Assembly: GCF_006345805.1 (NCBI RefSeq)
Contig: NC_043001.1
Coordinates: forward strand, 54,498,001 to 54,562,000
Reading direction: 5' to 3'
Source of the DNA: Octopus sinensis
Lineage: Eukaryota
Length of the DNA stretch: 64,000 nt
The translations under genes and the position numbers were made by a program. This document shows positions 9,090-51,550 of this stretch, piece by piece; within the stretch, counting starts at the first letter, position 1, and every line of letters begins with the position of its first letter. The notes under the pieces are model-generated. The model was not told the origin of the DNA and did not search any database. It saw only the letters and a list, made by a program, of their open reading frames with translations.

Positions 9090-9386
9090 AAGAGTACAAC
9101 AATCATGGTCAACGATGAGGCTGCCCAGCAGAGGCAACTCACTTGCTAGTTGACGCCTAACCGTTGTCTGATAGAACAAGTCATCCGCTTGGTCGCAAGC
9201 TTTTGGTGTAGGACTCCTCACATTGTCGGTTGTCCAACGTTCCGCTATCGACGTTTTCACCGTGTCCCTAGTAAGTGTGGCTAAGAGGTTACTAGCACTT
9301 GCCCAAGGTGCCTTCCTATTTTGTGTACAGGTGGATAGCAAAGAAAAGAGTTGAAAGCTTTCCTTATGGCCCATGATAGTAGCAAC
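9090..9386. repeat. 297-bp direct repeat, copy 1
   Basis: About 7 mismatches (manual count) versus 10309-10605. Confidence 0.95.
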
Positions 9387-9389
9387 TTA

Positions 9390-10900
9390 AGTTGGAAAAA
9401 GGCGAAATATTGTTCGTTGCTCTACCGATTGTGGATTAAGAGAGATGGTATTCTCAGGAGTGCTGCATTAGTCGTGTTTTGGGTAGTGTTGTAAATGTGT
9501 TTGCTTCTTTGTAGGTGAATGTGCATGTAATAACAGGAGCTGTGAGAAATTGGAGCCAACTGCGATATCAAACTGTACCTCTTGCATGTCACAGCGGTCT
9601 TGCACTTTCTGTATTGTTGTTTCGTAGTACAAAAGGATTGGGTGCAGCCTGTGACGATGCGAAGTTGACTAGTCGGTTTTGTTTTGTTATTTTCAGTAGA
9701 TGATTTACTAGGAAGGAGTGGACATGTTGGATTAAATGCGTGTTTTATCATTTGTTTATGTTGTTGAGTATAATGTTTGGCTTGTGAACTGTGGTGTTAC
9801 TACTATTAAGAAGAGAAATTGCTGATTAAACAGTGTTACTGTAAATATGTTTTTGGAGTCAGAATTCTAGGTGACTGTAAGATTGGAAACACTTTGTTAC
9901 ATAAGAGGAGTGGTAGAAAAATGTAAGTGCGATGCCATCTGTGTACGAGGCTGTGTTTGTGTTTGTGAAAAGATCATTTAGGACAGGTTAAAAAGTGGTA
10001 AGCCATAAAAGAAATTGCAAATGTTAGGTGTGTTGTTGCACACTACATAGGGTTGTTTACCTGGGTGTTTTGTGTTCTTTAAATGTTGTCGACCTCAGAG
10101 TTGTGCTCTTCTTCAAAGCGTGTTGAGTATTTTGTGCATCGTCGTCGTTGGTTGTCTGTTGCAGGTTGACGTTGAATACTCTGTTCAGAACGTCTCTGAA
10201 CAAAATGCTTTTGAACGGTGAGTAAGGCAGTTGGTATCATTTCCCCCTCACCCCCACCCCCACCAGGCTGCCTCTCTGGACCTCCACACCATGTACCAAA
10301 TTGTGTGCAAGAGTACAACAATTATGGTCAACGATGAGGCTGCCCAGCAGAGGCAACTCACTTGCTAGTTGACACCTAACCGTTGTCTGATGGTACAAGT
10401 CATCCGCTTGGTCGCAAGCTTTTGGTGTAGGACTCCTCACCCTGTCGGTTGTCCAACGTTCCGCTATCGACGTTTTCACCGTGTCCCTAGTAAGTGTGGC
10501 TAAGAGGTTACTAGCACTTGCCCAAGGTGCCATCCTATTTTGTGTACAGGTGGATAGCAAAGAAAAGAGTTGAAAGCTTTCCTTATGGCCCATGATAGTA
10601 GCAACAGTTTGTGTGTGTTGTTGAACTAATTATGCTTTGTCTAAGGTTTGTGAATGATATATTGGTTTATTATAAGGGTTTGTCTCCATGTTATGATTTG
10701 CATATGAGTGAAGTGTGGGGCTTTCTGAATATCAAGGGTATGTCTTAAAACAATTTTGGCGGCGTGCATAAAAGAGTGATAGGTCTATGTGAAGCTATTT
10801 CTCTTGGGTATTTGTTGGGCTTTAAAATTGTAATGGTTTTTCCCATTTAAACTCTGGGAGTCGGGTTGTGTTATACGCTTAGATGTACAAATTGATGAAT
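9390..10900 (-). mobile_element. Old, decayed non-LTR retrotransposon RT (Jockey/I-like group, clade uncertain)
   Basis: Minus-strand remnants HRPITLLC (SYRPISLL-like), ASYTDGIAL (YADD-like) and LRIVTGCT in RT order, with many stops and frameshifts. Confidence 0.55.
10309..10605. repeat. 297-bp direct repeat, copy 2
   Basis: Near-identical to 9090-9386; both give MGHKESFQLFSLLSTCTQ ORFs in the ORF track. Confidence 0.95.
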
Positions 10901-28087: not shown

Positions 28088-28980
28088 ACAACTTCTATTT
28101 ACTCCCTCTTACTACCAAACCGAACACGCTTAGGAAAATGTGTGGCATCAGGTCGTGCTAGCATTGGCTCTATGCCTTTAAAGCATACAGAACGAGCATA
28201 TTATAAACAACAAGACAGTGGTTGGAGACCGATTAACGAGTCAGATGTTTCACGTTGTTCGTCACCAGATATATGCGTCAAATACCATTCACCACAACTT
28301 ACTGACATTTCCAAGGTAAATACCAATTCCACACCTAATCTATTTATTGACGAAGCTGCTAAACTGGGCGAGAAAAAATCTATCTCCAAGACTCAAATTG
28401 ACCCTATGTCCTCTAGCTTTCCCAATGAAATAATGTTTCAAAACGGATGTCGTAGTTTCGAGACACCTGAAAGAAAAATGTCAATAGAAAACAATACAGA
28501 AACTTTATCAGGTAAGTCCGAGCCACAGAATCTGGAAAACGGAAATCAATCAAAAAGTTCGTCCGATATCGATAAAATTGCTTGTGATATTAACAAAAAC
28601 AATATTCCTCAACAAGAATCAAAAAAGGTTCAACAGAAAGAGGATAGCATTCCAGTTAAACCAATTGTTCCTATCAAAAGTAAGAAAGTGAATGCTAAAT
28701 CTAATAACTCTAAGAAATCACATTCTGGAAGCCATCATTCCCGGGAATTATCTCAAGAGGAAGTTGAATTTGAAGAAAAAGCAAAAGATTTGTATAAAGA
28801 CTTGAATGAAAACGATAAAGAATTATTAAGTGTTTTAAAGCCGAACAACAAACGTGCTACGGATTATGTTAAGAGTGTTTTTGATATACAGATTAGATTA
28901 AGTCGTTCAACAACTTTACAAGAACATCTTGAAAACCAAACACAGACGGAAGGGAAAGAAAATACAAACGAAGAAAACTG
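28088..28980 (+). CDS. shroom: Shroom-like protein, coding exon A (first detectable; first in-exon Met at 28172)
   Basis: Acceptor TTTTCTTTCATTTGCAG|, donor TG|GTAAGA (phase 2); open frame throughout; KAKDLYKDLNENDKELLSVLKPNNKRATDYVKSVF resembles the Shroom pre-SD2 motif (vertebrate LAKEIVHQDKSLADILDP..KTTMDLMEGLF, from memory). Confidence 0.8.
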
Positions 28981-31504: not shown

Positions 31505-31671
31505 ATTTAGATACACAGAAAGATGCCTTGTAACCTTACTATCAAAATATCAGGGCTTTAAGGGGTGATAGTAAAAATAATAGATTCGATTGGTCCATTA
31601 TAGAACACGCGTTCCCCTCCTTTGTTGGCTCTATAAAAGGTGACACTTGTTTTAATATCTCATTACATAAA

Positions 31672-31990
31672 GGCGGCGAGCTGGTAGAAACGTTAGCACG
31701 CCGGGCGAAATGCGTAGCCGTATTTCGTCTGCCGTTACGTTCTGAGTTCAAATTCCGCCGAGGTCGACTTTGCCTTTCATCCTTTCGGAGTCGAATAAAT
31801 AAGTACCAGTTAGGCACTGGGGTCGATATAATCGACTTAATCCGTTTGTCCTCTCTGTGTTTAGCCCCTTGTGTGTAGTAAAGAAATAGGTATTTCGTCT
31901 GTGTTTTCGTTTTGAATTCAAATTCCGCCAAGGTCGACTTTGCCTTTCCCAAAAAAATGTCGGGCCTTGTGCCTAGAGTAGAAAACAGTA
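31672..31990 (+). mobile_element. SINE family B, young copy fused to a second headless body
   Basis: Complete head, core and tail to ...AAGAAATAGG (31890), then re-entry at TATTTCGTCT. Confidence 0.9.
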
Positions 31991-36612: not shown

Positions 36613-36697
36613 TTCTACAGATGTAATTTCGAAAGAAGCTCCAACCCCAGATCAACAAGACAACAAGGTTGATGATAACTGTATATTAAAGAAAAAG
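36613..36697 (+). CDS. shroom: Shroom-like protein, coding exon B (85 nt)
   Basis: Long T-tract plus CAG| acceptor, donor AAG|GTGTGT; phase 2 in and phase 0 out, exactly bridging exons A and C; encodes (C)STDVISKEAPTPDQQDNKVDDNCILKKK. Confidence 0.8.
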
Positions 36698-38785: not shown

Positions 38786-38804
38786 TATTACTATTATATC
38801 TAAG

Positions 38805-39015
38805 GCAGTGAGCTGGCAGAATCACTTGCACGCCGGGCAAAATACTTAACTGCATTTCATCCGTCTTTATGTTCTGAGTTCAAATTCCGCCGAGATCGAT
38901 TTGGTCTTTCATCCCTTTCTGGGTCGATAAAACAAGTACCACTCGAACCTTGGGATCGATGTAATGGACTTACCCCCATCAACCCGAACTTGATGGTCTT
39001 GTGCCAAAATCTGAA
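38805..39015 (+). mobile_element. SINE family B copy
   Basis: GAGCTGGCAGAATC...GAGTTCAAATTCCGCCGAG...TTGTGCCAAAATCTGAA. Confidence 0.8.
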
Positions 39016-39034
39016 ATCATTATTATTATCACAT

Positions 39035-39495
39035 CTTTTATGCAGCAAGTTACAAAGGGAAAATACCGTTCGGTGTCCTTTACAGCTGTGTCACGATTCC
39101 TCTACCACCTCCTTTTGTACTGAAGGTCAACTCTGCATGCATTCCCGGAGGATGAGACAAACTATAAGAGACCACTGGCGATGGTTATACTGACTGACAC
39201 TATGGGATTTCTCAAGAGAATCCTTAAAACTTTTTCTTTGGTGCCGCTCTGTTATGATAGCTTGTAGGGAGAGAGTTCGCCAAGCATCGTTATCTTGAGC
39301 AGAATGTTCTATGACTTGTACCTTTAAGCTGCGACTTTAACTGCATGATCTCGGTGTTTCTAACCTCTTCCTTTCGAGGCTGATAACAAAGTCCCACCAG
39401 TGGGTGGTGAGGATGGAGCGGAGGCAGCGCTGATGGAAGAGCTCAATGAGTCAAAGATGGTGACTGCAGGTAGTCCACAACTCAGGGCCATACAG
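39035..39495 (-). mobile_element. RTE-clade LINE RT C-terminal fragment
   Basis: Minus strand LYGPELWTT...FHQRCLRSILTTHWWD and a KKSFKDSL-like remnant (RTE LYGSETW/FHQRCLR/RFKDxLK motifs). Confidence 0.75.
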
Positions 39496-39644
39496 AAAAC
39501 AAGCATAGTACATCCCACTCATTCCATGATTCTCCACTCGGAATTCGAACTCGGTGCAGAGAAAGCCAAAACAAATATCACAAAGCATTCCACAGTTCGC
39601 TCAAGTAACTTTACTAATTCACTGCACAAACAGACAGATAAAAG

Positions 39645-39701
<57 letters not shown>

Positions 39702-40563
39702 GATAGTGGTATCACACTGATGTGAAATGCATTTGTATGCAAGTAAGTACTCAGTACACTTAAGAATAATGTTTATTCGAAGTTGATTCTGTTCGAGTTA
39801 CTCCCAGTTTCCTATTCTTGTTTATATATGTGCGCCTATGCTATGACGATATATGTACGTGTTTGTATACACGTATGATATGTGTGTGTGTGTATGTGTG
39901 TAAATGTAGATGCATATGTTTTTACATGTGCATTTTTGTTTGTTATACACGTGTGCTCGTGTGCAAATATAAATAGGCACACGTGTTTAACTTGTTTATT
40001 TTTTTATTTTTGTATATGTATATATTTTTGTTGGCATATACACACATGTGTGTATATACCTATGTATATGTAACTATGTATGTGATTATGCGGAAATATG
40101 AGGCGCCACATGTTTATCTATATACACAAACCTGTTTCAGCTTGTGTTTCGTGTATCACAATATTTTGTTCTGAGTAGTGTGCTCATATATGCATGAGTA
40201 TGTGCACATACATATAAATATATATACACAAATACATGCACGTGCTCTCACACACACACACATGGGATAGGATGGTTGTTGTCACTTGTTGTGCAACCGT
40301 GCTGAACCTACTCGTCTGGTGTAAGTATAAACATACAAACATCAAGCTGCTTCTATTCTTAATACGACTTCAACCTGATTTTATCTTTGTTTTTGAGAGT
40401 GTATTATTAGAGTTGAAAAACAAATTACGACCAGATTATACCATGATACTGCAAGAACAGAATTATTGTAGAGAAAATTTACTATCTTTGGTACTTTGCA
40501 ACGTTCACCTTGGATTCCCCGAGTATACACCCCTGATATCTATCAAAATTTGTGTGTGTGTGT

Positions 40564-40619
<56 letters not shown>

Positions 40620-40749
40620 CGTGCGTGCGTGTGTGTGTGTGAATATATATTAATACTGATTTCAAATTTTGGCACATGGCCAGCAATTTCGAAGGAGGGG
40701 ATAAGTCTATTATATTGACCCTAGTTCTCAACCACGAGAAAGAACTGAA

Positions 40750-41393: not shown

Positions 41394-41495
41394 GAAGAAC
41401 TGAAAGAGTCCATTCGAAAAAAACTAGAAGCTCTACAAGTGGTCAAACAAACCATTGAACGAGAGACCAAAGATATCAATAATTTAGGAGAAAAG
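41394..41495 (+). CDS. shroom: Shroom-like protein, coding exon C (start of ASD2/SD2 domain)
   Basis: Acceptor CTTCTTACAACAG|, donor AAG|GTGGGT, phase 0/0; EELKESIRKKLEALQVVKQTIERETKDINNLGEK matches the SD2 start pattern EELI.SI.KKL.....N..LG. Confidence 0.88.
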
Positions 41496-43106: not shown

Positions 43107-43152
<46 letters not shown>

Positions 43153-43223
43153 CGCGCGATGGGGGAGACGTTCATTTATGAAGTAGTTCTGTCTTTTCCC
43201 TGCAATTTAATATGATTTATAAA

Positions 43224-43440: not shown

Positions 43441-43602
43441 ATCCTTAATTCTTTGGAAGAACTGTGTGATAATCCACAAGAGAAAAACAAATATCGAGCT
43501 TATATTGAAGATTTACTCATGGTTATGCGATTGTTAATGAAATTATCAGTTCTGCTCGCCAGGGCAGAAAATTCAGCCAATTGTGCCGACGAAACACGAA
43601 GG
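43441..43602 (+). CDS. shroom: Shroom-like protein, coding exon D (ASD2 core)
   Basis: Acceptor TTTGTTTTGTTTGCAG|, donor AGG|GTAAGT, phase 0/0; ELCDNPQEKNKYRAYIEDLLMVMRLLMKLSVLLARAEN aligns to SD2 C.P.E..KY..FI.DL..V..LLLSLSGRLARVEN. Confidence 0.9.
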
Positions 43603-43994
43603 GTAAGTACTTAAAGTTTGACGTCCAATTTGCAATATGGATAAGTATGAATTAATAAATTCATACTTATCCATTGGTGTCTTCTGCATGAAGGACTTAC
43701 AGTTAAGAGTCTGCTTACGGAATGTTGGGTGCCAAAAAGAATTTGTAATCAGTTAGAATTACAGATGTCTTCCTTGTCACGTTGCGTCTCTGAAAATATT
43801 GCGTGACGTGGAAATCTGCATACACGATACGTTCACCAGCTTATATATATATATATATATATATAAGAAATTAAAAAGGGAAATACGCACACTTACATAG
43901 TTTTAATATAATCTTTAATATATCGACCGGTTTCGCTATCGCTATTCATGATAATATGTTTTATTTATTTGAATATATATTTTTTCTTAAGAAG

Positions 43995-44054
43995 AAATTT
44001 GGTCCATGTTGTGTGATATATATATATATATATGTATATGTATATATATGTATG

Positions 44055-44088
<34 letters not shown>

Positions 44089-44238
44089 TATGCATGTATA
44101 TATATGTATGTATATATATATGTATGTATATAAATGTTTGTATGTATATGTATGTATATATATATGTATGTATATAAATGTTTGTATGTATATATATATA
44201 TATATGAATGTATGTATATATATGTATGTATATATATG

Positions 44239-44269
<31 letters not shown>

Positions 44270-44305
44270 GTATGTATATATACATATATGTATGTATGTA
44301 CGTAT
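43995..44305. repeat. (AT)n/(ATGT)n compound microsatellite
   Basis: Direct reading. Confidence 0.95.
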
Positions 44306-44607
44306 AATATGGAAGTCAATAGAATATGGGTTTCGCAAGATTTCCAAGAAGGAAATGATATCCTAGTGCAGAGAATATGTGTATGCATGATTAGGAGAAA
44401 AGTCAACTAGAATTAGGATTTGAAGATTTTCACCTGGATTTGAAGTACCATTTTCTGAGTTTAACAGTCAATAACACAAAGTGTGTTTATTTCAGGCAAT
44501 ATTCTCATTCTCATGTCACGTATCCCATCTTCAGAATATAGCTGACATTGCAATTAGAGCTTAAATTCATATTATTTCATATTTATTTTCAATCACTAAT
44601 TTAGTAC

Positions 44608-45491: not shown

Positions 45492-45794
45492 AGACTTGCT
45501 ATTGAGAAACGAGACCGATTACACGGACAATATCAGGAAGCAAAACAGCTGAAAACTGATATCGATCGGAGGCAAGAGCCAATTGAAAGTATATTGTGTC
45601 GTTATTTGCCGGATTCTGGTATCAGAGATTTCCATCGTTATATTTTAATGAAGATCAAATTAATTATAGAACAACAAGATGTTGAAGATAAAATCTTTCT
45701 CGCACAAGAACAATTAGTTGTTGTAAAACGCAGTCTTCCAATGTCCTATTCTAATACACTTCAAAGACTTTCAAAGGATTCTGTTCCCAAATAG
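45492..45794 (+). CDS. shroom: Shroom-like protein, terminal coding exon E (ASD2 C-terminus)
   Basis: Acceptor TCTTTCAATTTCAG|; RLAIEKRDRLHGQYQEAKQLKTDIDRRQ...ILCRYL...DFHRYILMKIKLIIEQQDVEDKIFLAQEQL matches SD2 Q.EDA.ELKENLDRRE...F..MK..L.IEQRELE.KI.LG.EQL; stop TAG at 45792-94. Confidence 0.9.
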   Translation, partial: RLAIEKRDRLHGQYQEAKQLKTDIDRRQEPIESILCRYLPDSGIRDFHRYILMKIKLIIEQQDVEDKIFLAQEQLVVVKRSLPMSYSNTLQRLSKDSVPK

Positions 45795-48025: not shown

Positions 48026-48484
48026 GAACACTTGAAAATTACATGAAGAAAAATAATTAAATCACCAAACACCAGAATTTTAATGTCTTGTGTAGTTTTT
48101 TTTTTTTTTTTCAATCAACTATATAATCTTCTGAAAGCTTTGTTAATTTTCGACAACGTATGTTTTTCAGTACAAGATGGATTTCTTTGAATTTCAGGAT
48201 CAAGCTGCTTGAATCGATAAAGTCCAGTTCTCTGGAATTTGAACATCCGTTCGTGAGTGACGCAACTTAACGCAGGGAGGGAATTCCAGAGGAGTTCATT
48301 TCCGTAGATGATCTCTAACACAGAGTATTGTTTGAGAAAGTATGTCTAATACTTTTTAGTGCATTTAACTTGCACTTTTCTGTAACAGTCGTTTCCACCG
48401 TCCTATGCCAGTATCTGTATGTGGTTAACAGTTTTAATGTGACAAGTATTAGACTTGTATTTCTAAACAGTATCATGTAAGATA

Positions 48485-49425
48485 GTCTTCATAAATGACT
48501 TGCCCGACGACCTCACGCAACACACCCTTCTATTTGCCGACGATATCAAACTGGTCGCTCCTCGCGGTAGTATAGAGGATCTTCGTCGATGCCTCCACCA
48601 AATTTGGAAGTGGTCTAACGATTGGGACCTGTGTCTGAACGTGTCAAAGTGCTGTCATCTGCCTGTCGGCTCTACTCCTGCAACTCAACTTGATTTCGAG
48701 CCGGGTCGTCTGCTGCTGGAGAGGACCGATCAGGTAAAGGACCTGGGTATCTTGGTGGATTCCTCCTTTTCGCCTTCGGCCCAGTGCGTCCATGCTGCCA
48801 ACAAAGCGCGCGGAATTCTGTTTTTGATTCGACGGTCATTCGGAATGCTCACAGCAGCCATATTCCTGCCACTCTATGTCACGCTGGTGAGACCCATATT
48901 GGAGTATGGGATTCAAGCCTCTTCTCCTTATCTCCTCAAAGACATACAGCACCTCGAAAGAGTCCAGAGGCTGGCTACCCGCATGGTTCATGGTCTCAAA
49001 AATGTGTCCTACGAAGAAAGGCTGAGGACGCTCGACCTTTGTTCTCTTGAAAAACGCCGCCGCCGTGGTGATCTCATTCTCGCCCACAACATCATAAGCG
49101 GGAAGTGTAACCTCTCGAAAGAGCTGTTCTTCACTCCTGCTCCGGAGCGTCGGCTGCGGGGTCAATCCGAAAAGCTCTACCTGCGACGATTTCATCTCAA
49201 TCGAAGGAGAGGAGCTTTCTCCGTCCGGGTTGCGGATCCGTGGAACAAGCTGCCAGACGAGATGGTGAAGATGCCGACGACCGCTTTGTTCAAAGCCTCC
49301 CTGGACCTCAAGTGGCCTGAACTCTTTACATGAACACCACCCTGTACTTAACTCCATGTCCCCCTACATGGCCTTGCTATTTGCTTTTGAGCCAAATTAA
49401 CTAACTAACTAACTAACTAACTAAC
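48485..49425 (+). mobile_element. 5'-truncated, apparently young CR1-clade LINE
   Basis: Stop-free VFINDLPDD...LLFADDIKL...KDLGILVD...LVRPILEYG...LERVQRLATR...LEKRRRRGDLI to stop at 49333; 3' hairpin CCATGT(6)ACATGG; (TAAC)n tail. Confidence 0.92.
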
Positions 49426-49964: not shown

Positions 49965-50356
49965 TTGATAGCCCCACAAGCGGGCCTACCAAATGAAGAG
50001 AAGGATCACTTTTATGATATTCTTCTGCAGGCTACCTCAAAGATGAGTGATAATGATATCATTTTTGTAGCAGGAGATTTTAATGGACATGTCGAATAAC
50101 AATATGGTATCTTCCATAGTGTACATGAAAGCCATGGAGTTGGTACCAAAAATGAAGAGGGAACTAGGCTCCTGGAGATTTGAGATGCAAATAACCTATT
50201 GATCTGCAACACAAACTTCAGGAAGCCAGCTAGCCTATCTATCAGATGACTCTGCTAGCCAGATCGATTTCATTCTCACCAGACAGCGGGATGCATGGTG
50301 GCTCTTAAATACAAAAACCCTCCCTGGTGAAGAATGTACCCTCAACATAGACTAGT
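49965..50356 (+). mobile_element. RTE-clade LINE APE endonuclease fragment
   Basis: APQAGLPNEEKDHFY...VAGDFNGHV...NEEGTRLL...LICNTNFRK...SQIDFIL...QHRLV, with stops. Confidence 0.85.
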
Positions 50357-51550
50357 GATCTTGGCATAGTTGGAAAATTGGGAGAATGGCTTCATGACTT
50401 TCTGAAGGATAGAAGTCAGGTTGTAGTAGCCAATGGGGCCACCTCCAATGACACGCATATAGTGAGCGGTGTTCTGCAAGGCACTGTTTTGGGACCACTA
50501 CTGTTCATAATGGCCCTCTCAGACATGCCCTCATCCACGCAGAGAGCCACGATCACAAGTTATGCAGATGATACAAAAGTTTCACAGGTAATGCAGAACC
50601 CTGAAGACACTATGCACCTGCAATGTCAGCTGGACAAAATATACAAGTGGGCTGAAAAGAATAGCATGCAGTTCAATGCTGAAAATTTTCAAGCTTTATG
50701 CTATCAGCATGCAAAACTAAATGCAATACCCAATAAATACACTGGACCTGGATGGATTGCAATCCCAGTGGCACAATCAGTGCGAGACCTGGGTATTTAC
50801 ATGAGTAATGCTGCAACATTTCATGTGCATGTTGCTAAATTGGCAATGAAGTGTAGGCAGCTGACCGGATGGATTCTTAGAGCTTTTAGAACAAGAGACC
50901 AGGAAACCATGATGGTCCCCTAGAGGACGCTTGTCCTAAGCCATTTTGACTATTGCTTTCAGCTATGGTCACCAACCAGAGACAAATTAATCTCAGAACT
51001 TGAGGCAATCCAACGAAGCTACACGAAGAAGCTAGCCTCTATGCAGCATATAAGCTATTGGGAAAGACTCAAGAGATTAAGACTCTATTCCTTAGAGCGC
51101 AGGCGAAAAAGATATGTCATAATATACATCTGGAAGATCCTAGAAGGACTTGTCCCAAACTTTGGCATCAAGAGTTACACAAATACAAGAACTAGGCGCC
51201 ACTGCATAGTGCCAAGCACTCCAAATTTGCCATCAAGATGTAGGACAAGATACTGCGATAGCCTGGGCTTCGGAGGTCCACAGCTCTTCAATATCCTCCT
51301 GAAGGACCTGAGAGACCTGCATGGGGTGGATGCAGATGTCTTCAAAATAAAGCTGGACATCTTCCTGTCAGGTGTCCCAGACGAACCAACTTCACGGCAG
51401 GAGGTGCAGATGAGGGCAGCTGCATCAAACTCTCTCATGCACCAAATGTCAATTGCTAAAAAGCATTCGTGAAGTAAAATCATGTAGCAACACCCGAATG
51501 GCGGTGCCCCAGCATGGCCACAGCTCGTGAGCTGAAACTAGATGAAATGC
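50357..51550 (+). mobile_element. 5'-truncated CR1-clade LINE (RT C-half plus 3' UTR), distinct from the 48485 family
   Basis: WLHDFLKDRSQVV..SGVLQGTVLGPLLF...SYADDTK...RDLGI...DYCFQLWSP...YSLERRRKRY; one in-frame TAG at 50921-23; stop at 51472. Confidence 0.9.

What the first reader, a model, noticed from the sequence alone, without database searches (positions are those of the whole stretch)
43540..43560. ROCK-binding patch SLSGRLA replaced by KLSVLLA
Seen: codons AAA TTA TCA GTT CTG CTC GCC fall where SD2 domains have SLSGRLA, while the second patch LKENLDRR is largely kept (LKTDIDRR). Established, from memory: this surface, including the Arg (mouse Shroom3 R1838), is needed for Rho-kinase binding. 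A-to-I editing cannot convert CTG to an Arg codon. Inference: a ROCK-blind or re-targeted SD2 that might act as a dimerising modulator of canonical Shroom, or that co-evolved with cephalopod ROCK.
Basis: partly seen in the sequence, partly recalled or inferred. Interest (0 to 1): 0.7.

Follow-up and report, generated by a model that had tools for sequence, protein, structure and literature searches.

The report
Mollusc-wide variant of Shroom's ROCK-binding patch
The octopus Shroom gene really lacks the arginine that mouse and fly Shroom need to bind Rho-kinase, but every mollusc Shroom found lacks it too and the patch is strongly conserved, so it is a phylum-level variant of a working domain, not an octopus oddity.

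Summary
Window 43540-43560 (+) encodes KLSVLLA inside a coding exon (43441-43602) of the annotated Octopus sinensis gene 'protein Shroom1' (XP_029636465.2, 100% identical over the SD2 domain). It aligns without gaps to SLSGRLA of human Shroom2 and SLSERLA of fly Shroom. LKTDIDRR (45549-45572) sits where LKENLDRR does.

Loss of the Arg is not specific to octopus:
- All 22 proteins of the mollusc clade among the 150 best SD2 hits lack it. Bivalves have KLSGLLA, gastropods NLSGQLA, cephalopods KLSVLLA.
- All 126 other hits keep Arg, including annelids and a nemertean.
- The sequences without Arg form one exclusive clade. Only Gly-to-Val is specific to cephalopods.

The patch is under strong purifying selection. 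Thirteen of 15 codons of RLLMKLSVLLARAEN vary synonymously among four cephalopods, with no amino-acid change. dN/dS for the SD2 core is about 0.05-0.06. The predicted fold matches human Shroom2 SD2 (TM 0.82-0.92).

No Arg-bearing 'canonical' mollusc Shroom was seen, so a dominant-negative modulator is unlikely.

Most likely this is a functional SD2 that still engages Rho-kinase through a remodelled, lineage-specific interface. That last step is an inference: no mollusc ROCK could be retrieved, so a phylum-wide change of partner is not excluded.

The parts
28088..28980 (+). Large coding exon of the Shroom-family gene (aa 188-485 of XP_029636465.2). It includes the N-terminal, weakly conserved part of the Pfam ASD2 region. 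It ends in phase 2.
   Evidence: tblastn of P0001 against the window. The translation is identical to P0001 residues 188-485. Acceptor tttgcag|AC, donor TG|gtaaga.
36613..36697 (+). Small coding exon (aa 485-513; completes the Cys codon, then STDVISKEAPTPDQQDNKVDDNCILKKK).
   Evidence: tblastn at 100% identity. Acceptor ...ttttcag|T and donor AAG|gtgtgt read.
41394..41495 (+). Exon encoding the start of the SD2 core (EELKESIRKKLEALQVVKQTIERETKDINNLGEK), phase 0/0.
   Evidence: Sequence and splice sites. Pfam ASD2 positions 115-151. Matches P0001 residues 514-547.
43441..43602 (+). Exon carrying the first Rock-binding patch (SC2). It is 162 nt, phase 0/0, so skipping it would stay in frame.
   Evidence: The Argonauta orthologous exon lies at L004:66233-66394.
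43528..43530 (+). CGA = Arg, eight residues upstream of the lost Arg (SD2 position 64). This basic residue is specific to molluscs: Arg in 20 of 22 and Lys in one (Mytilus), against Ser/Asn elsewhere.
   Evidence: Column comparison; codons.
43540..43560 (+). KLSVLLA, the cephalopod form of the SLSGRLA (SC2) patch.
43552..43554 (+). CTG = Leu at the position of mouse Shroom3 R1838 / fly Shroom R1474.
   Evidence: Function of the Arg: PMC4163662.
45492..45794 (+). Last coding exon (the rest of SD2 and the C-terminus), including stop TAG at 45792-45794.
   Evidence: Pfam ASD2 positions 211-289, E 6e-22. 100% identical to P0001 residues 602-701.
45549..45572 (+). LKTDIDRR, the second Rock-binding patch (SC3). 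All four residues mutated in the published SC3 mutant (L, K, R, R) are kept.
   Evidence: The SC3 mutant is defined in PMC3364177.

Best explanation
The window holds the 3' two-thirds of the annotated octopus Shroom-family gene ('protein Shroom1', 701 aa, ASD2 as its only recognised domain). KLSVLLA is the cephalopod version of a derived form of the SD2 'surface cluster 2' patch that is shared by all molluscs sampled. The Arg that is otherwise invariant was replaced in the mollusc stem lineage. It is Leu in bivalves and cephalopods and Gln in gastropods, each one nucleotide step away from a CGR Arg codon. Cephalopods later changed the neighbouring, already variable Gly to Val. The patch and the whole SD2 are kept by strong purifying selection, and the domain is predicted to fold like human Shroom2 SD2. 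The most likely mechanism (inferred, not shown) is that the protein still works as a Shroom. Its antiparallel coiled-coil SD2 would dock on the coiled-coil Shroom-binding segment of Rho-kinase, to place and activate it and so drive myosin-II contractility. The docking surface would have been re-tuned in molluscs. The charged 'g'-type position became hydrophobic or polar, and several other mollusc-specific changes arose in the same helices: a new Arg eight residues upstream, Glu lost at position 87, Leu to Thr/Ala at position 91. A matching change on mollusc ROCK is possible.
For: - **Identity of the gene and domain.**. ASD2 scores 156.9 bits against a 26.4-bit cut-off, and the SD2 is 100% identical to XP_029636465.2.
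- **Fold.** AlphaFold2 gives pLDDT 90.4. The top Foldseek PDB hits are human Shroom2 SD2 chains, TM 0.82-0.92, rmsd 1.2-2.0 Å.
- **Mollusc-wide distribution.** Leu or Gln in 22 of 22 proteins of the mollusc clade, against Arg in 126 of 126 others.
- **Taxa named.** Octopus, Argonauta, Mytilus, Pinctada, Sinanodonta, Ylistrum, Dreissena, Mya, Haliotis, Batillaria, Candidula, Lymnaea, Lottia, Elysia, Physella, Nucella and Babylonia lack Arg. Capitella, Owenia and Tubulanus keep it.
- **Single origin.** The sequences without Arg form one exclusive clade (support 0.95; cephalopod clade 100/100).
- **Selection.** In RLLMKLSVLLARAEN, 13 of 15 codons differ synonymously among four cephalopods and none differs nonsynonymously. 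dN/dS for the SD2 core is 0.063 (Octopus-Argonauta) and 0.052 (the two transcriptome species).
- **Second patch.** The SC3 patch residues L, K, R, R are intact.
- **Some tolerance at the Arg position.** R1838A keeps intermediate Rock binding in GST assays (PMC4163662).
- **Function of SD2.** ROCK binding is the only SD2 function described in the papers read (PMC3364177, PMC3857177).
Against: - In mouse Shroom3, R1838A and R1838C lose stable complex formation with untagged proteins, Rock recruitment and most apical constriction. The equivalent fly R1474 mutant does not bind Rock (PMC4163662). A non-basic residue at this position is therefore expected to weaken binding unless something compensates.
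- No compensation on the ROCK side could be examined.
- The mollusc proteins show no Pfam ASD1 or PDZ domain. A published survey found no SHROOM3-type actin-binding motif in Mollusca (PMC13364712). Mollusc Shroom may therefore differ from canonical Shroom in more than this patch.
- The co-changes listed are confounded by shared ancestry (effectively one event), and their 3-D proximity was not measured.
Confidence: 0.6

Rival explanations
1. The partner changed across the whole phylum. Mollusc SD2 no longer binds Rho-kinase (or binds it only weakly), and the conserved surface now serves another partner or a ROCK-independent role.
For: The Arg is essential in mouse and fly (PMC4163662), yet it is absent in all 22 mollusc SD2s. 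Several further mollusc-specific surface changes occur at SD2 positions 49, 64, 87, 91 and 97. No ASD1 or PDZ domain is detected, and no actin-binding SFM motif was found in Mollusca (PMC13364712). Strong purifying selection shows the surface is used, but not by what.
Against: The second Rock-binding patch is intact, and the rest of the domain remains about 40% identical to vertebrate SD2. The predicted fold matches ROCK-bound Shroom2 (5F5P). No alternative SD2 ligand appears in the papers read. R1838A retains partial binding.
Confidence: 0.25
2. One reading: this octopus protein is a ROCK-blind paralogue that heterodimerises with, and modulates, a canonical Arg-bearing Shroom in the same animal.
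For: Octopus bimaculoides has a second SD2 gene (XP_014773109.1, P0010). The residue at the Arg position in that gene is unknown, because its gene model skips the equivalent exon.
Against: The paralogue is nested inside the cephalopod clade, which is itself inside the Arg-less mollusc clade, so parsimony predicts that it lacks Arg too. Bivalves and gastropods carry the same loss in every SD2 gene recovered from them (one for most species, two for Candidula). No Arg-bearing sequence falls within the mollusc clade among the 150 best hits.
Confidence: 0.04
3. An artefact: an assembly or annotation error, or a decaying pseudogene.
For: None found.
Against: The peptide is identical in three Octopus species, in Argonauta and in two transcriptome assemblies, with synonymous codon differences. 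All five exons in the window have intact splice sites and an open frame. dN/dS is about 0.06.
Confidence: 0.01

Closest known systems
Human SHROOM2 SD2 (PDB 5F4Y alone; 5F5P with ROCK1) and mouse Shroom3 SD2
   Same: Same Pfam family (ASD2). E 1e-22 to the PDB chains. Predicted fold TM 0.82-0.92. The hydrophobic core residues around the patch (L-L-x-x-L-S-x-x-L-A-R-x-E-N) and the second patch LKxxxDRR are conserved.
   Different: SLSGRLA becomes KLSVLLA. The Arg (mouse R1838) that is required for Rock binding and apical constriction is Leu. The protein is short (701 aa), with no PDZ or ASD1 domain detected.
Drosophila Shroom SD2 (PDB 3THF)
   Same: An invertebrate SD2 with the same architecture (E 1e-14). 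The position of the octopus Val is also non-Gly in fly (Glu), which shows that this position is free to vary.
   Different: Fly keeps the Arg (R1474), whose mutation abolishes Rok binding (PMC4163662). Octopus has Leu.
Bivalve and gastropod Shroom-like proteins (e.g. Mytilus edulis XP_071127346.1, Haliotis asinina XP_067663537.1)
   Same: They share the loss of the Arg (KLSGLLA, NLSGQLA) and the mollusc-specific Arg/Lys eight residues upstream. ASD2 is their only Pfam domain. They fall in the same clade.
   Different: They keep Gly where cephalopods have Val. Most are much longer proteins (2,000-3,200 aa). Gastropods have Gln rather than Leu.
Annelid and nemertean Shroom SD2 (Capitella ELU03935.1, Owenia CAH1777229.1, Tubulanus XP_074651874.1)
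   Same: These are the closest named non-mollusc relatives. They already have Lys at patch position 1 (KLSGRLA) and Gln in place of the Arg of the IEQR motif.
   Different: They keep the Arg, and also Glu87 and Leu91, which molluscs changed.

Membership tests
Shroom family, ASD2/SD2 domain (Pfam PF08687) | Significant full-length match to the ASD2 profile, above Pfam's gathering score | tested here: met
   P0001 (identical to the window's exons) scores 156.9 bits against a 26.4-bit cut-off, covering profile positions 1-289. Single exons score 33.3 and 79.1 bits.
Shroom family, ASD2/SD2 domain (Pfam PF08687) | SD2 fold: long antiparallel helical coiled-coil as in solved Shroom2 SD2 | tested here: met
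   This rests on a predicted model only. AF2 pLDDT 90.4, all-helical. Foldseek top six hits are all Shroom2 SD2 chains, TM 0.68-0.92, rmsd 1.2-2.0 Å; the next hit has E 0.03.
Canonical ROCK-binding SD2 (as defined by Mohan 2012 and Das 2014) | Surface cluster 2, S-L-S-(G/E)-R-L-A, with the invariant Arg (mouse R1838 / fly R1474) | tested here: not met
   KLSVLLA, with Leu (CTG 43552-43554) at the Arg position. Of the four surface residues altered in the published SC2 mutant (S, S, R, A), S3 and A7 are kept, while S1 is Lys and R5 is Leu.
Canonical ROCK-binding SD2 (as defined by Mohan 2012 and Das 2014) | Surface cluster 3, L-K-x-x-h-D/E-R-R | tested here: met
   LKTDIDRR at 45549-45572. L, K, R and R are all present.
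Canonical ROCK-binding SD2 (as defined by Mohan 2012 and Das 2014) | Hydrophobic residues needed for dimerisation (HD1 LLSL, HD2 LLIEQRKL) | tested here: inconclusive
   In HD1, LMKL replaces LLSL, and the Leu positions L65, L66 and L69 are invariant in the alignment. In HD2, LIIEQQDV keeps the first Leu, but the Arg is Gln (shared with annelids and the nemertean) and the last Leu is Val. Dimerisation itself was not tested.
Canonical ROCK-binding SD2 (as defined by Mohan 2012 and Das 2014) | Direct binding to the Shroom-binding segment of Rho-kinase (human ROCK1 842-859: QYF, LYKTQ) | not testable with these tools
   This needs a binding assay or at least a complex model. Even the sequence of mollusc ROCK could not be retrieved: only the best 120 hits were listed, and all were vertebrate ROCK1.
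Full-length Shroom2/3/4 architecture | N-terminal PDZ domain and actin-binding ASD1 | tested here: not met
   Pfam finds only ASD2 in the octopus protein, in two other cephalopod proteins, and in Mytilus and Haliotis. Residues 1-187 of the octopus protein lie outside the window but were included in that scan. These domains are not required for family membership: vertebrate Shroom1 lacks a PDZ domain (from general knowledge).

The most novel reading that the evidence does not exclude
An entire phylum (Mollusca) replaced the one SD2 arginine that is invariant in all other animals sampled and essential for Rho-kinase binding in mouse and fly. It did so together with a small set of co-changes on the same helices. 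Either the Shroom-ROCK interface was rebuilt by co-evolution, or mollusc Shroom was uncoupled from ROCK and now drives cell-shape change through another partner. Either way, this is a natural experiment on how a conserved coiled-coil signalling interface can be rewired.
Probability: 0.3. Interest if true: 0.6.

Novelty: new variant of a known kind. Interest (0 to 1): 0.35.

Why it matters
Shroom-ROCK coupling is the textbook route to apical constriction (neural tube, lens, gut), and R1838 is its best-characterised single-residue requirement. In 2014 the position was described as Arg in every SD2 known. A phylum in which it is always Leu or Gln, under strong constraint, does three things:
- It limits how far the 'invariant Arg' rule can be used to predict function from sequence.
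- It offers ready-made natural variants (R to L, R to Q, with candidate compensating sites at positions 64, 87 and 91) for dissecting the interface.
- It raises the question of whether mollusc morphogenesis uses Shroom-ROCK at all.

For the genome scan itself, the gene is ordinary and already annotated. The value lies in the comparative pattern, not in this locus.

Tried and rejected
1. **Mollusc ROCK.** Its Shroom-binding segment proved identical to PDB 5F5P_C/4L2W_C, with QYF at position 850. I searched the protein database with region 830-1015. There were 2,114 hits, but only the best 120 are listed, and all are vertebrate ROCK1. The ROCK side is therefore untested.
2. **Second octopus gene.**
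   - The look-up of encoding contigs has no record for XP_014773109.1.
   - A whole-protein homology search with it was swamped by low-complexity words and gave nothing useful. The exon that would hold its patch remains unread.
3. **Zalewski 2016.** This paper on the Shroom2-ROCK1 complex (JBC; PMC5207239) is not held. No held paper gives residue-level contacts from 5F5P. Which ROCK residues touch the Arg is therefore unknown here.
4. **Species of the two transcriptome assemblies.** The runs are SRR27666070 and SRR21372859/55, and no paper cites them. They are cephalopod by tree position and probably decapodiform, but this is inferred.
5. **Literature.** The first mollusc search was badly posed. 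The repeat searches found no paper on Shroom SD2 in molluscs or cephalopods.
6. **Rejected: pseudogene or assembly error.** Selection and cross-species identity rule these out.
7. **Rejected: RNA editing as a rescue.** CTG has no adenosine.
8. **Rejected: the candidate exon-like ORFs at 39364-39654 and 40218-40715.** They have no Pfam hit and no match to the annotated protein.

Full report
**What is at the coordinates**

Bases 43540-43560 on the + strand read AAA TTA TCA GTT CTG CTC GCC = KLSVLLA. They lie in a eukaryotic coding exon, 43441-43602 (162 nt, phase 0/0, acceptor tttgcag|ATC, donor AGG|gtaagt). This exon alone matches Pfam ASD2 at profile positions 155-200 (E 5e-8). The last exon (45492-45794, stop TAG) matches positions 211-289 (E 6e-22).

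The three SD2 exons are 41394-41495, 43441-43602 and 45492-45791. Joined at their splice sites, they hit the solved SD2 structures by sequence: human Shroom2 (5F5P, 5F4Y; E 1e-22) and Drosophila Shroom (3THF; E 1e-14). In those alignments KLSVLLARAEN lies, without gaps, opposite SLSGRLARVEN (human) and SLSERLAQTES (fly). LKTDIDRR lies opposite LKENLDRR and LKSDIERR.

**The gene**

A HMMER search of 1.84 billion representative proteins with the spliced SD2 gave 515 hits. The top hit is 100% identical over 188 residues: XP_029636465.2, 'protein Shroom1 [Octopus sinensis]', 701 aa. Its 90% cluster also holds O. bimaculoides XP_014770413.1 and an O. vulgaris fragment.

That protein maps onto five exons in the window: 28088-28980, 36613-36697, 41394-41495, 43441-43602 and 45492-45794. 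Residues 1-187 are encoded upstream of the window. ASD2 is the only Pfam domain in this protein, with no PDZ or ASD1. The same holds for two other cephalopod proteins and for Mytilus and Haliotis.

An AlphaFold2 model of the octopus SD2, built on a 12-sequence alignment, is all-helical with mean pLDDT 90.4. Its six best Foldseek matches in the PDB are all human Shroom2 SD2 chains, both free (5F4Y) and ROCK1-bound (5F5P), with TM 0.68-0.92 and rmsd 1.2-2.0 Å. Nothing else is below E 0.02. This is a real, annotated Shroom-family gene with a normal SD2 fold.

**What the literature says about the patch**

- Mohan et al. 2012 (PMC3364177) defined surface clusters on SD2. Changing fly SLSERLA or mouse SLSGRLA (SC2), or LKSDIERR/LKENLDRR (SC3), disrupts Rock binding and apical constriction.
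- Das et al. 2014 (PMC4163662) showed that the ENU allele R1838C causes exencephaly. R1838A and R1838C lose stable Rock binding, Rock recruitment and most apical constriction, and the fly R1474 mutant cannot bind Rock. [quoted passage not shown] They also note that R1838A keeps intermediate binding in some assays, 'some tolerance'.
- On the ROCK side, residues 842-859 of human ROCK1 (QYF 850-852, LYKTQ 855-859) are the binding determinants (PMC3857177).

CTG has no adenosine, so the statement about editing is right too.

**The decisive comparison**

I aligned the 150 best hits and read the column of the Arg. Two fragmentary entries that do not cover this column are left out.

| Group | Residue at the Arg position |
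|---|---|
| 126 proteins | Arg |
| 7 proteins | Leu |
| 15 proteins | Gln |

Names from the source databases show the following:

- **Leu, cephalopods (KLSVLLA):** Octopus, Argonauta and two transcriptome assemblies.
- **Leu, bivalves (KLSGLLA):** Mytilus, Pinctada, Sinanodonta, Ylistrum, Dreissena and Mya.
- **Gln, gastropods (NLSGQLA):** every named one, namely Haliotis, Batillaria, Candidula (two genes), Lymnaea, Lottia, Elysia, Physella, Nucella and Babylonia.
- **Arg kept, nearest non-molluscs (KLSGRLA):** the annelids Capitella and Owenia and the nemertean Tubulanus. A hemichordate, insects and vertebrates also keep it.

In a tree of 149 SD2 domains, the sequences without Arg form one exclusive clade (support 0.95). 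Its successive sisters are an unnamed Arg-bearing transcript, then Tubulanus, then the annelids. A more careful 18-taxon tree gives a cephalopod clade at 100/100.

So the loss of the Arg is a shared, derived character of molluscs. Only Gly-to-Val is cephalopod-specific, and that position is already Glu in fly. Lys at the first position is shared with annelids.

**Is the patch still functional?**

I fetched the Argonauta hians locus (L004) and two cephalopod transcripts (L001, L002). The 15 residues RLLMKLSVLLARAEN are identical in all four species, while 13 of the 15 codons differ synonymously.

| Pair | dN/dS, SD2 core | dN/dS, motif exon |
|---|---|---|
| Octopus-Argonauta | 0.063 | 0.11 |
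| The two transcriptome species | 0.052 | 0.05 |

Between octopods and the transcriptome species, synonymous sites are saturated. This excludes assembly error and decay. It also shows that this surface is used.

**Other mollusc-specific changes**

A column-by-column comparison, with annelids and the nemertean as outgroups, gives these differences:

- A new Arg (Lys in Mytilus) eight residues upstream of the lost Arg (SD2 position 64; window CGA 43528-43530), where others have Ser or Asn.
- Phe/Leu to Lys/Arg at position 49.
- Loss of Glu at position 87.
- Leu to Thr/Ala at position 91.
- Arg at position 97.

The Arg-to-Gln change in the IEQR motif (position 150) is older, because annelids and the nemertean share it.

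From the spacing of invariant leucines (59, 62, 66, 69, 73, 76), the lost Arg sits at a 'g'-type position flanking the hydrophobic seam. Position 91 should lie roughly opposite it in the hairpin. This suggests a packing swap or a widened hydrophobic face, but it is inference. No coordinates were available, and all these changes trace to effectively one evolutionary event.

**Mechanism**

*Shown:*
- The gene is a Shroom-family member with an SD2 of normal predicted fold.
- The Arg is missing across molluscs.
- The patch is under strong constraint.
- The second Rock-binding patch is intact.

*Inferred (about 60%):* the domain still docks on Rho-kinase's coiled coil through an interface re-tuned in the mollusc stem lineage, possibly with matching changes in mollusc ROCK.

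*Main rival (about 25%):* mollusc SD2 was uncoupled from ROCK and the conserved surface serves something else. The lack of ASD1 and PDZ fits this loosely. So does a 2026 survey that found no SHROOM3-type actin-binding motif in Mollusca (PMC13364712).

- No Arg-bearing mollusc SD2 was seen.
- The one other octopus SD2 gene (O. bimaculoides XP_014773109.1) is nested within the Arg-less clade.
- That gene's residue is unknown, because its model joins '...LGEK' directly to 'ELAIEKRD...' and so skips the equivalent exon.

**What could not be done**

- No mollusc ROCK could be retrieved.
- The paper describing the 5F5P interface is not held.
- The paralogue's locus is not on record.

These gaps define the next steps.

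**Verdict**

The locus is an ordinary, already annotated gene. The comparative pattern is a real variant: a phylum-wide replacement of an 'invariant', functionally essential Arg, held under strong purifying selection. No paper in the searched library reports it. It is of moderate interest to people who work on Shroom-ROCK signalling.

Noticed in passing
window 43441-43602; compare P0010 (O. bimaculoides XP_014773109.1): The exon that carries the patch is 162 nt and phase 0/0, so skipping it would delete exactly the SC2 region in frame. The gene model of the second octopus SD2 gene lacks the equivalent exon ('...SLGEK|ELAIEKRD...'). This could be an assembly gap, an annotation miss or a real isoform.
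   Followed up: partly
P0010 against P0001, P0003 and P0174: Octopus has at least two SD2 genes. In the tree the paralogue is sister to (two unnamed cephalopod transcripts + the octopod 'Shroom1' clade) with support 96/91, and the octopod branch is long (0.86). The paralogue and the transcripts share an N-terminus (MYSY.LKRWGLKY...) that the O. sinensis model lacks, so the annotated first exon of this gene may be incomplete or alternative.
   Followed up: partly
window 48467-49330 and 50351-51469 (+): Long open stretches downstream of the gene carry reverse-transcriptase (RVT_1) fragments (E 3e-5 and 1e-9). These are non-LTR retrotransposon remnants and are not part of the Shroom gene.
   Followed up: partly
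window about 645-992, 31534-31875, 38804-39190; also 9175-9351 and 10391-10570: Similar translated stretches recur several times within the introns and upstream region (e.g. '...ELAESLARRAKYL...FKFRR...', and a near-identical 59-aa stretch 'KSSAWSQAFGVGLLTLSVVQRSAIDVF...' seen twice). This points to interspersed repeat families.
   Followed up: no
window 43113-43160, 43842-44330, 39650-39700 and many others: The introns hold dense microsatellites: (GT)n(GC)n just upstream of the motif exon, long (TA)n/(TATG)n just downstream, and (GA)n. This is typical of octopus genomes. These are also the kind of sequence that breaks assemblies and could explain missing exons in older gene models.
   Followed up: no
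P0121 (Logan transcript, 2,223 aa): An unnamed Arg-bearing SD2 (KLSRRLA) is the immediate sister of the Arg-less mollusc clade. If it comes from an early-branching mollusc or a brachiopod, it would date the loss of the Arg.
   Followed up: no
P0017 / P0325: A gastropod-type SD2 (NLSGQLA) sits on JGI/IMG 'metagenome' contigs. Some metagenome records therefore hold mollusc host transcripts.
   Followed up: no
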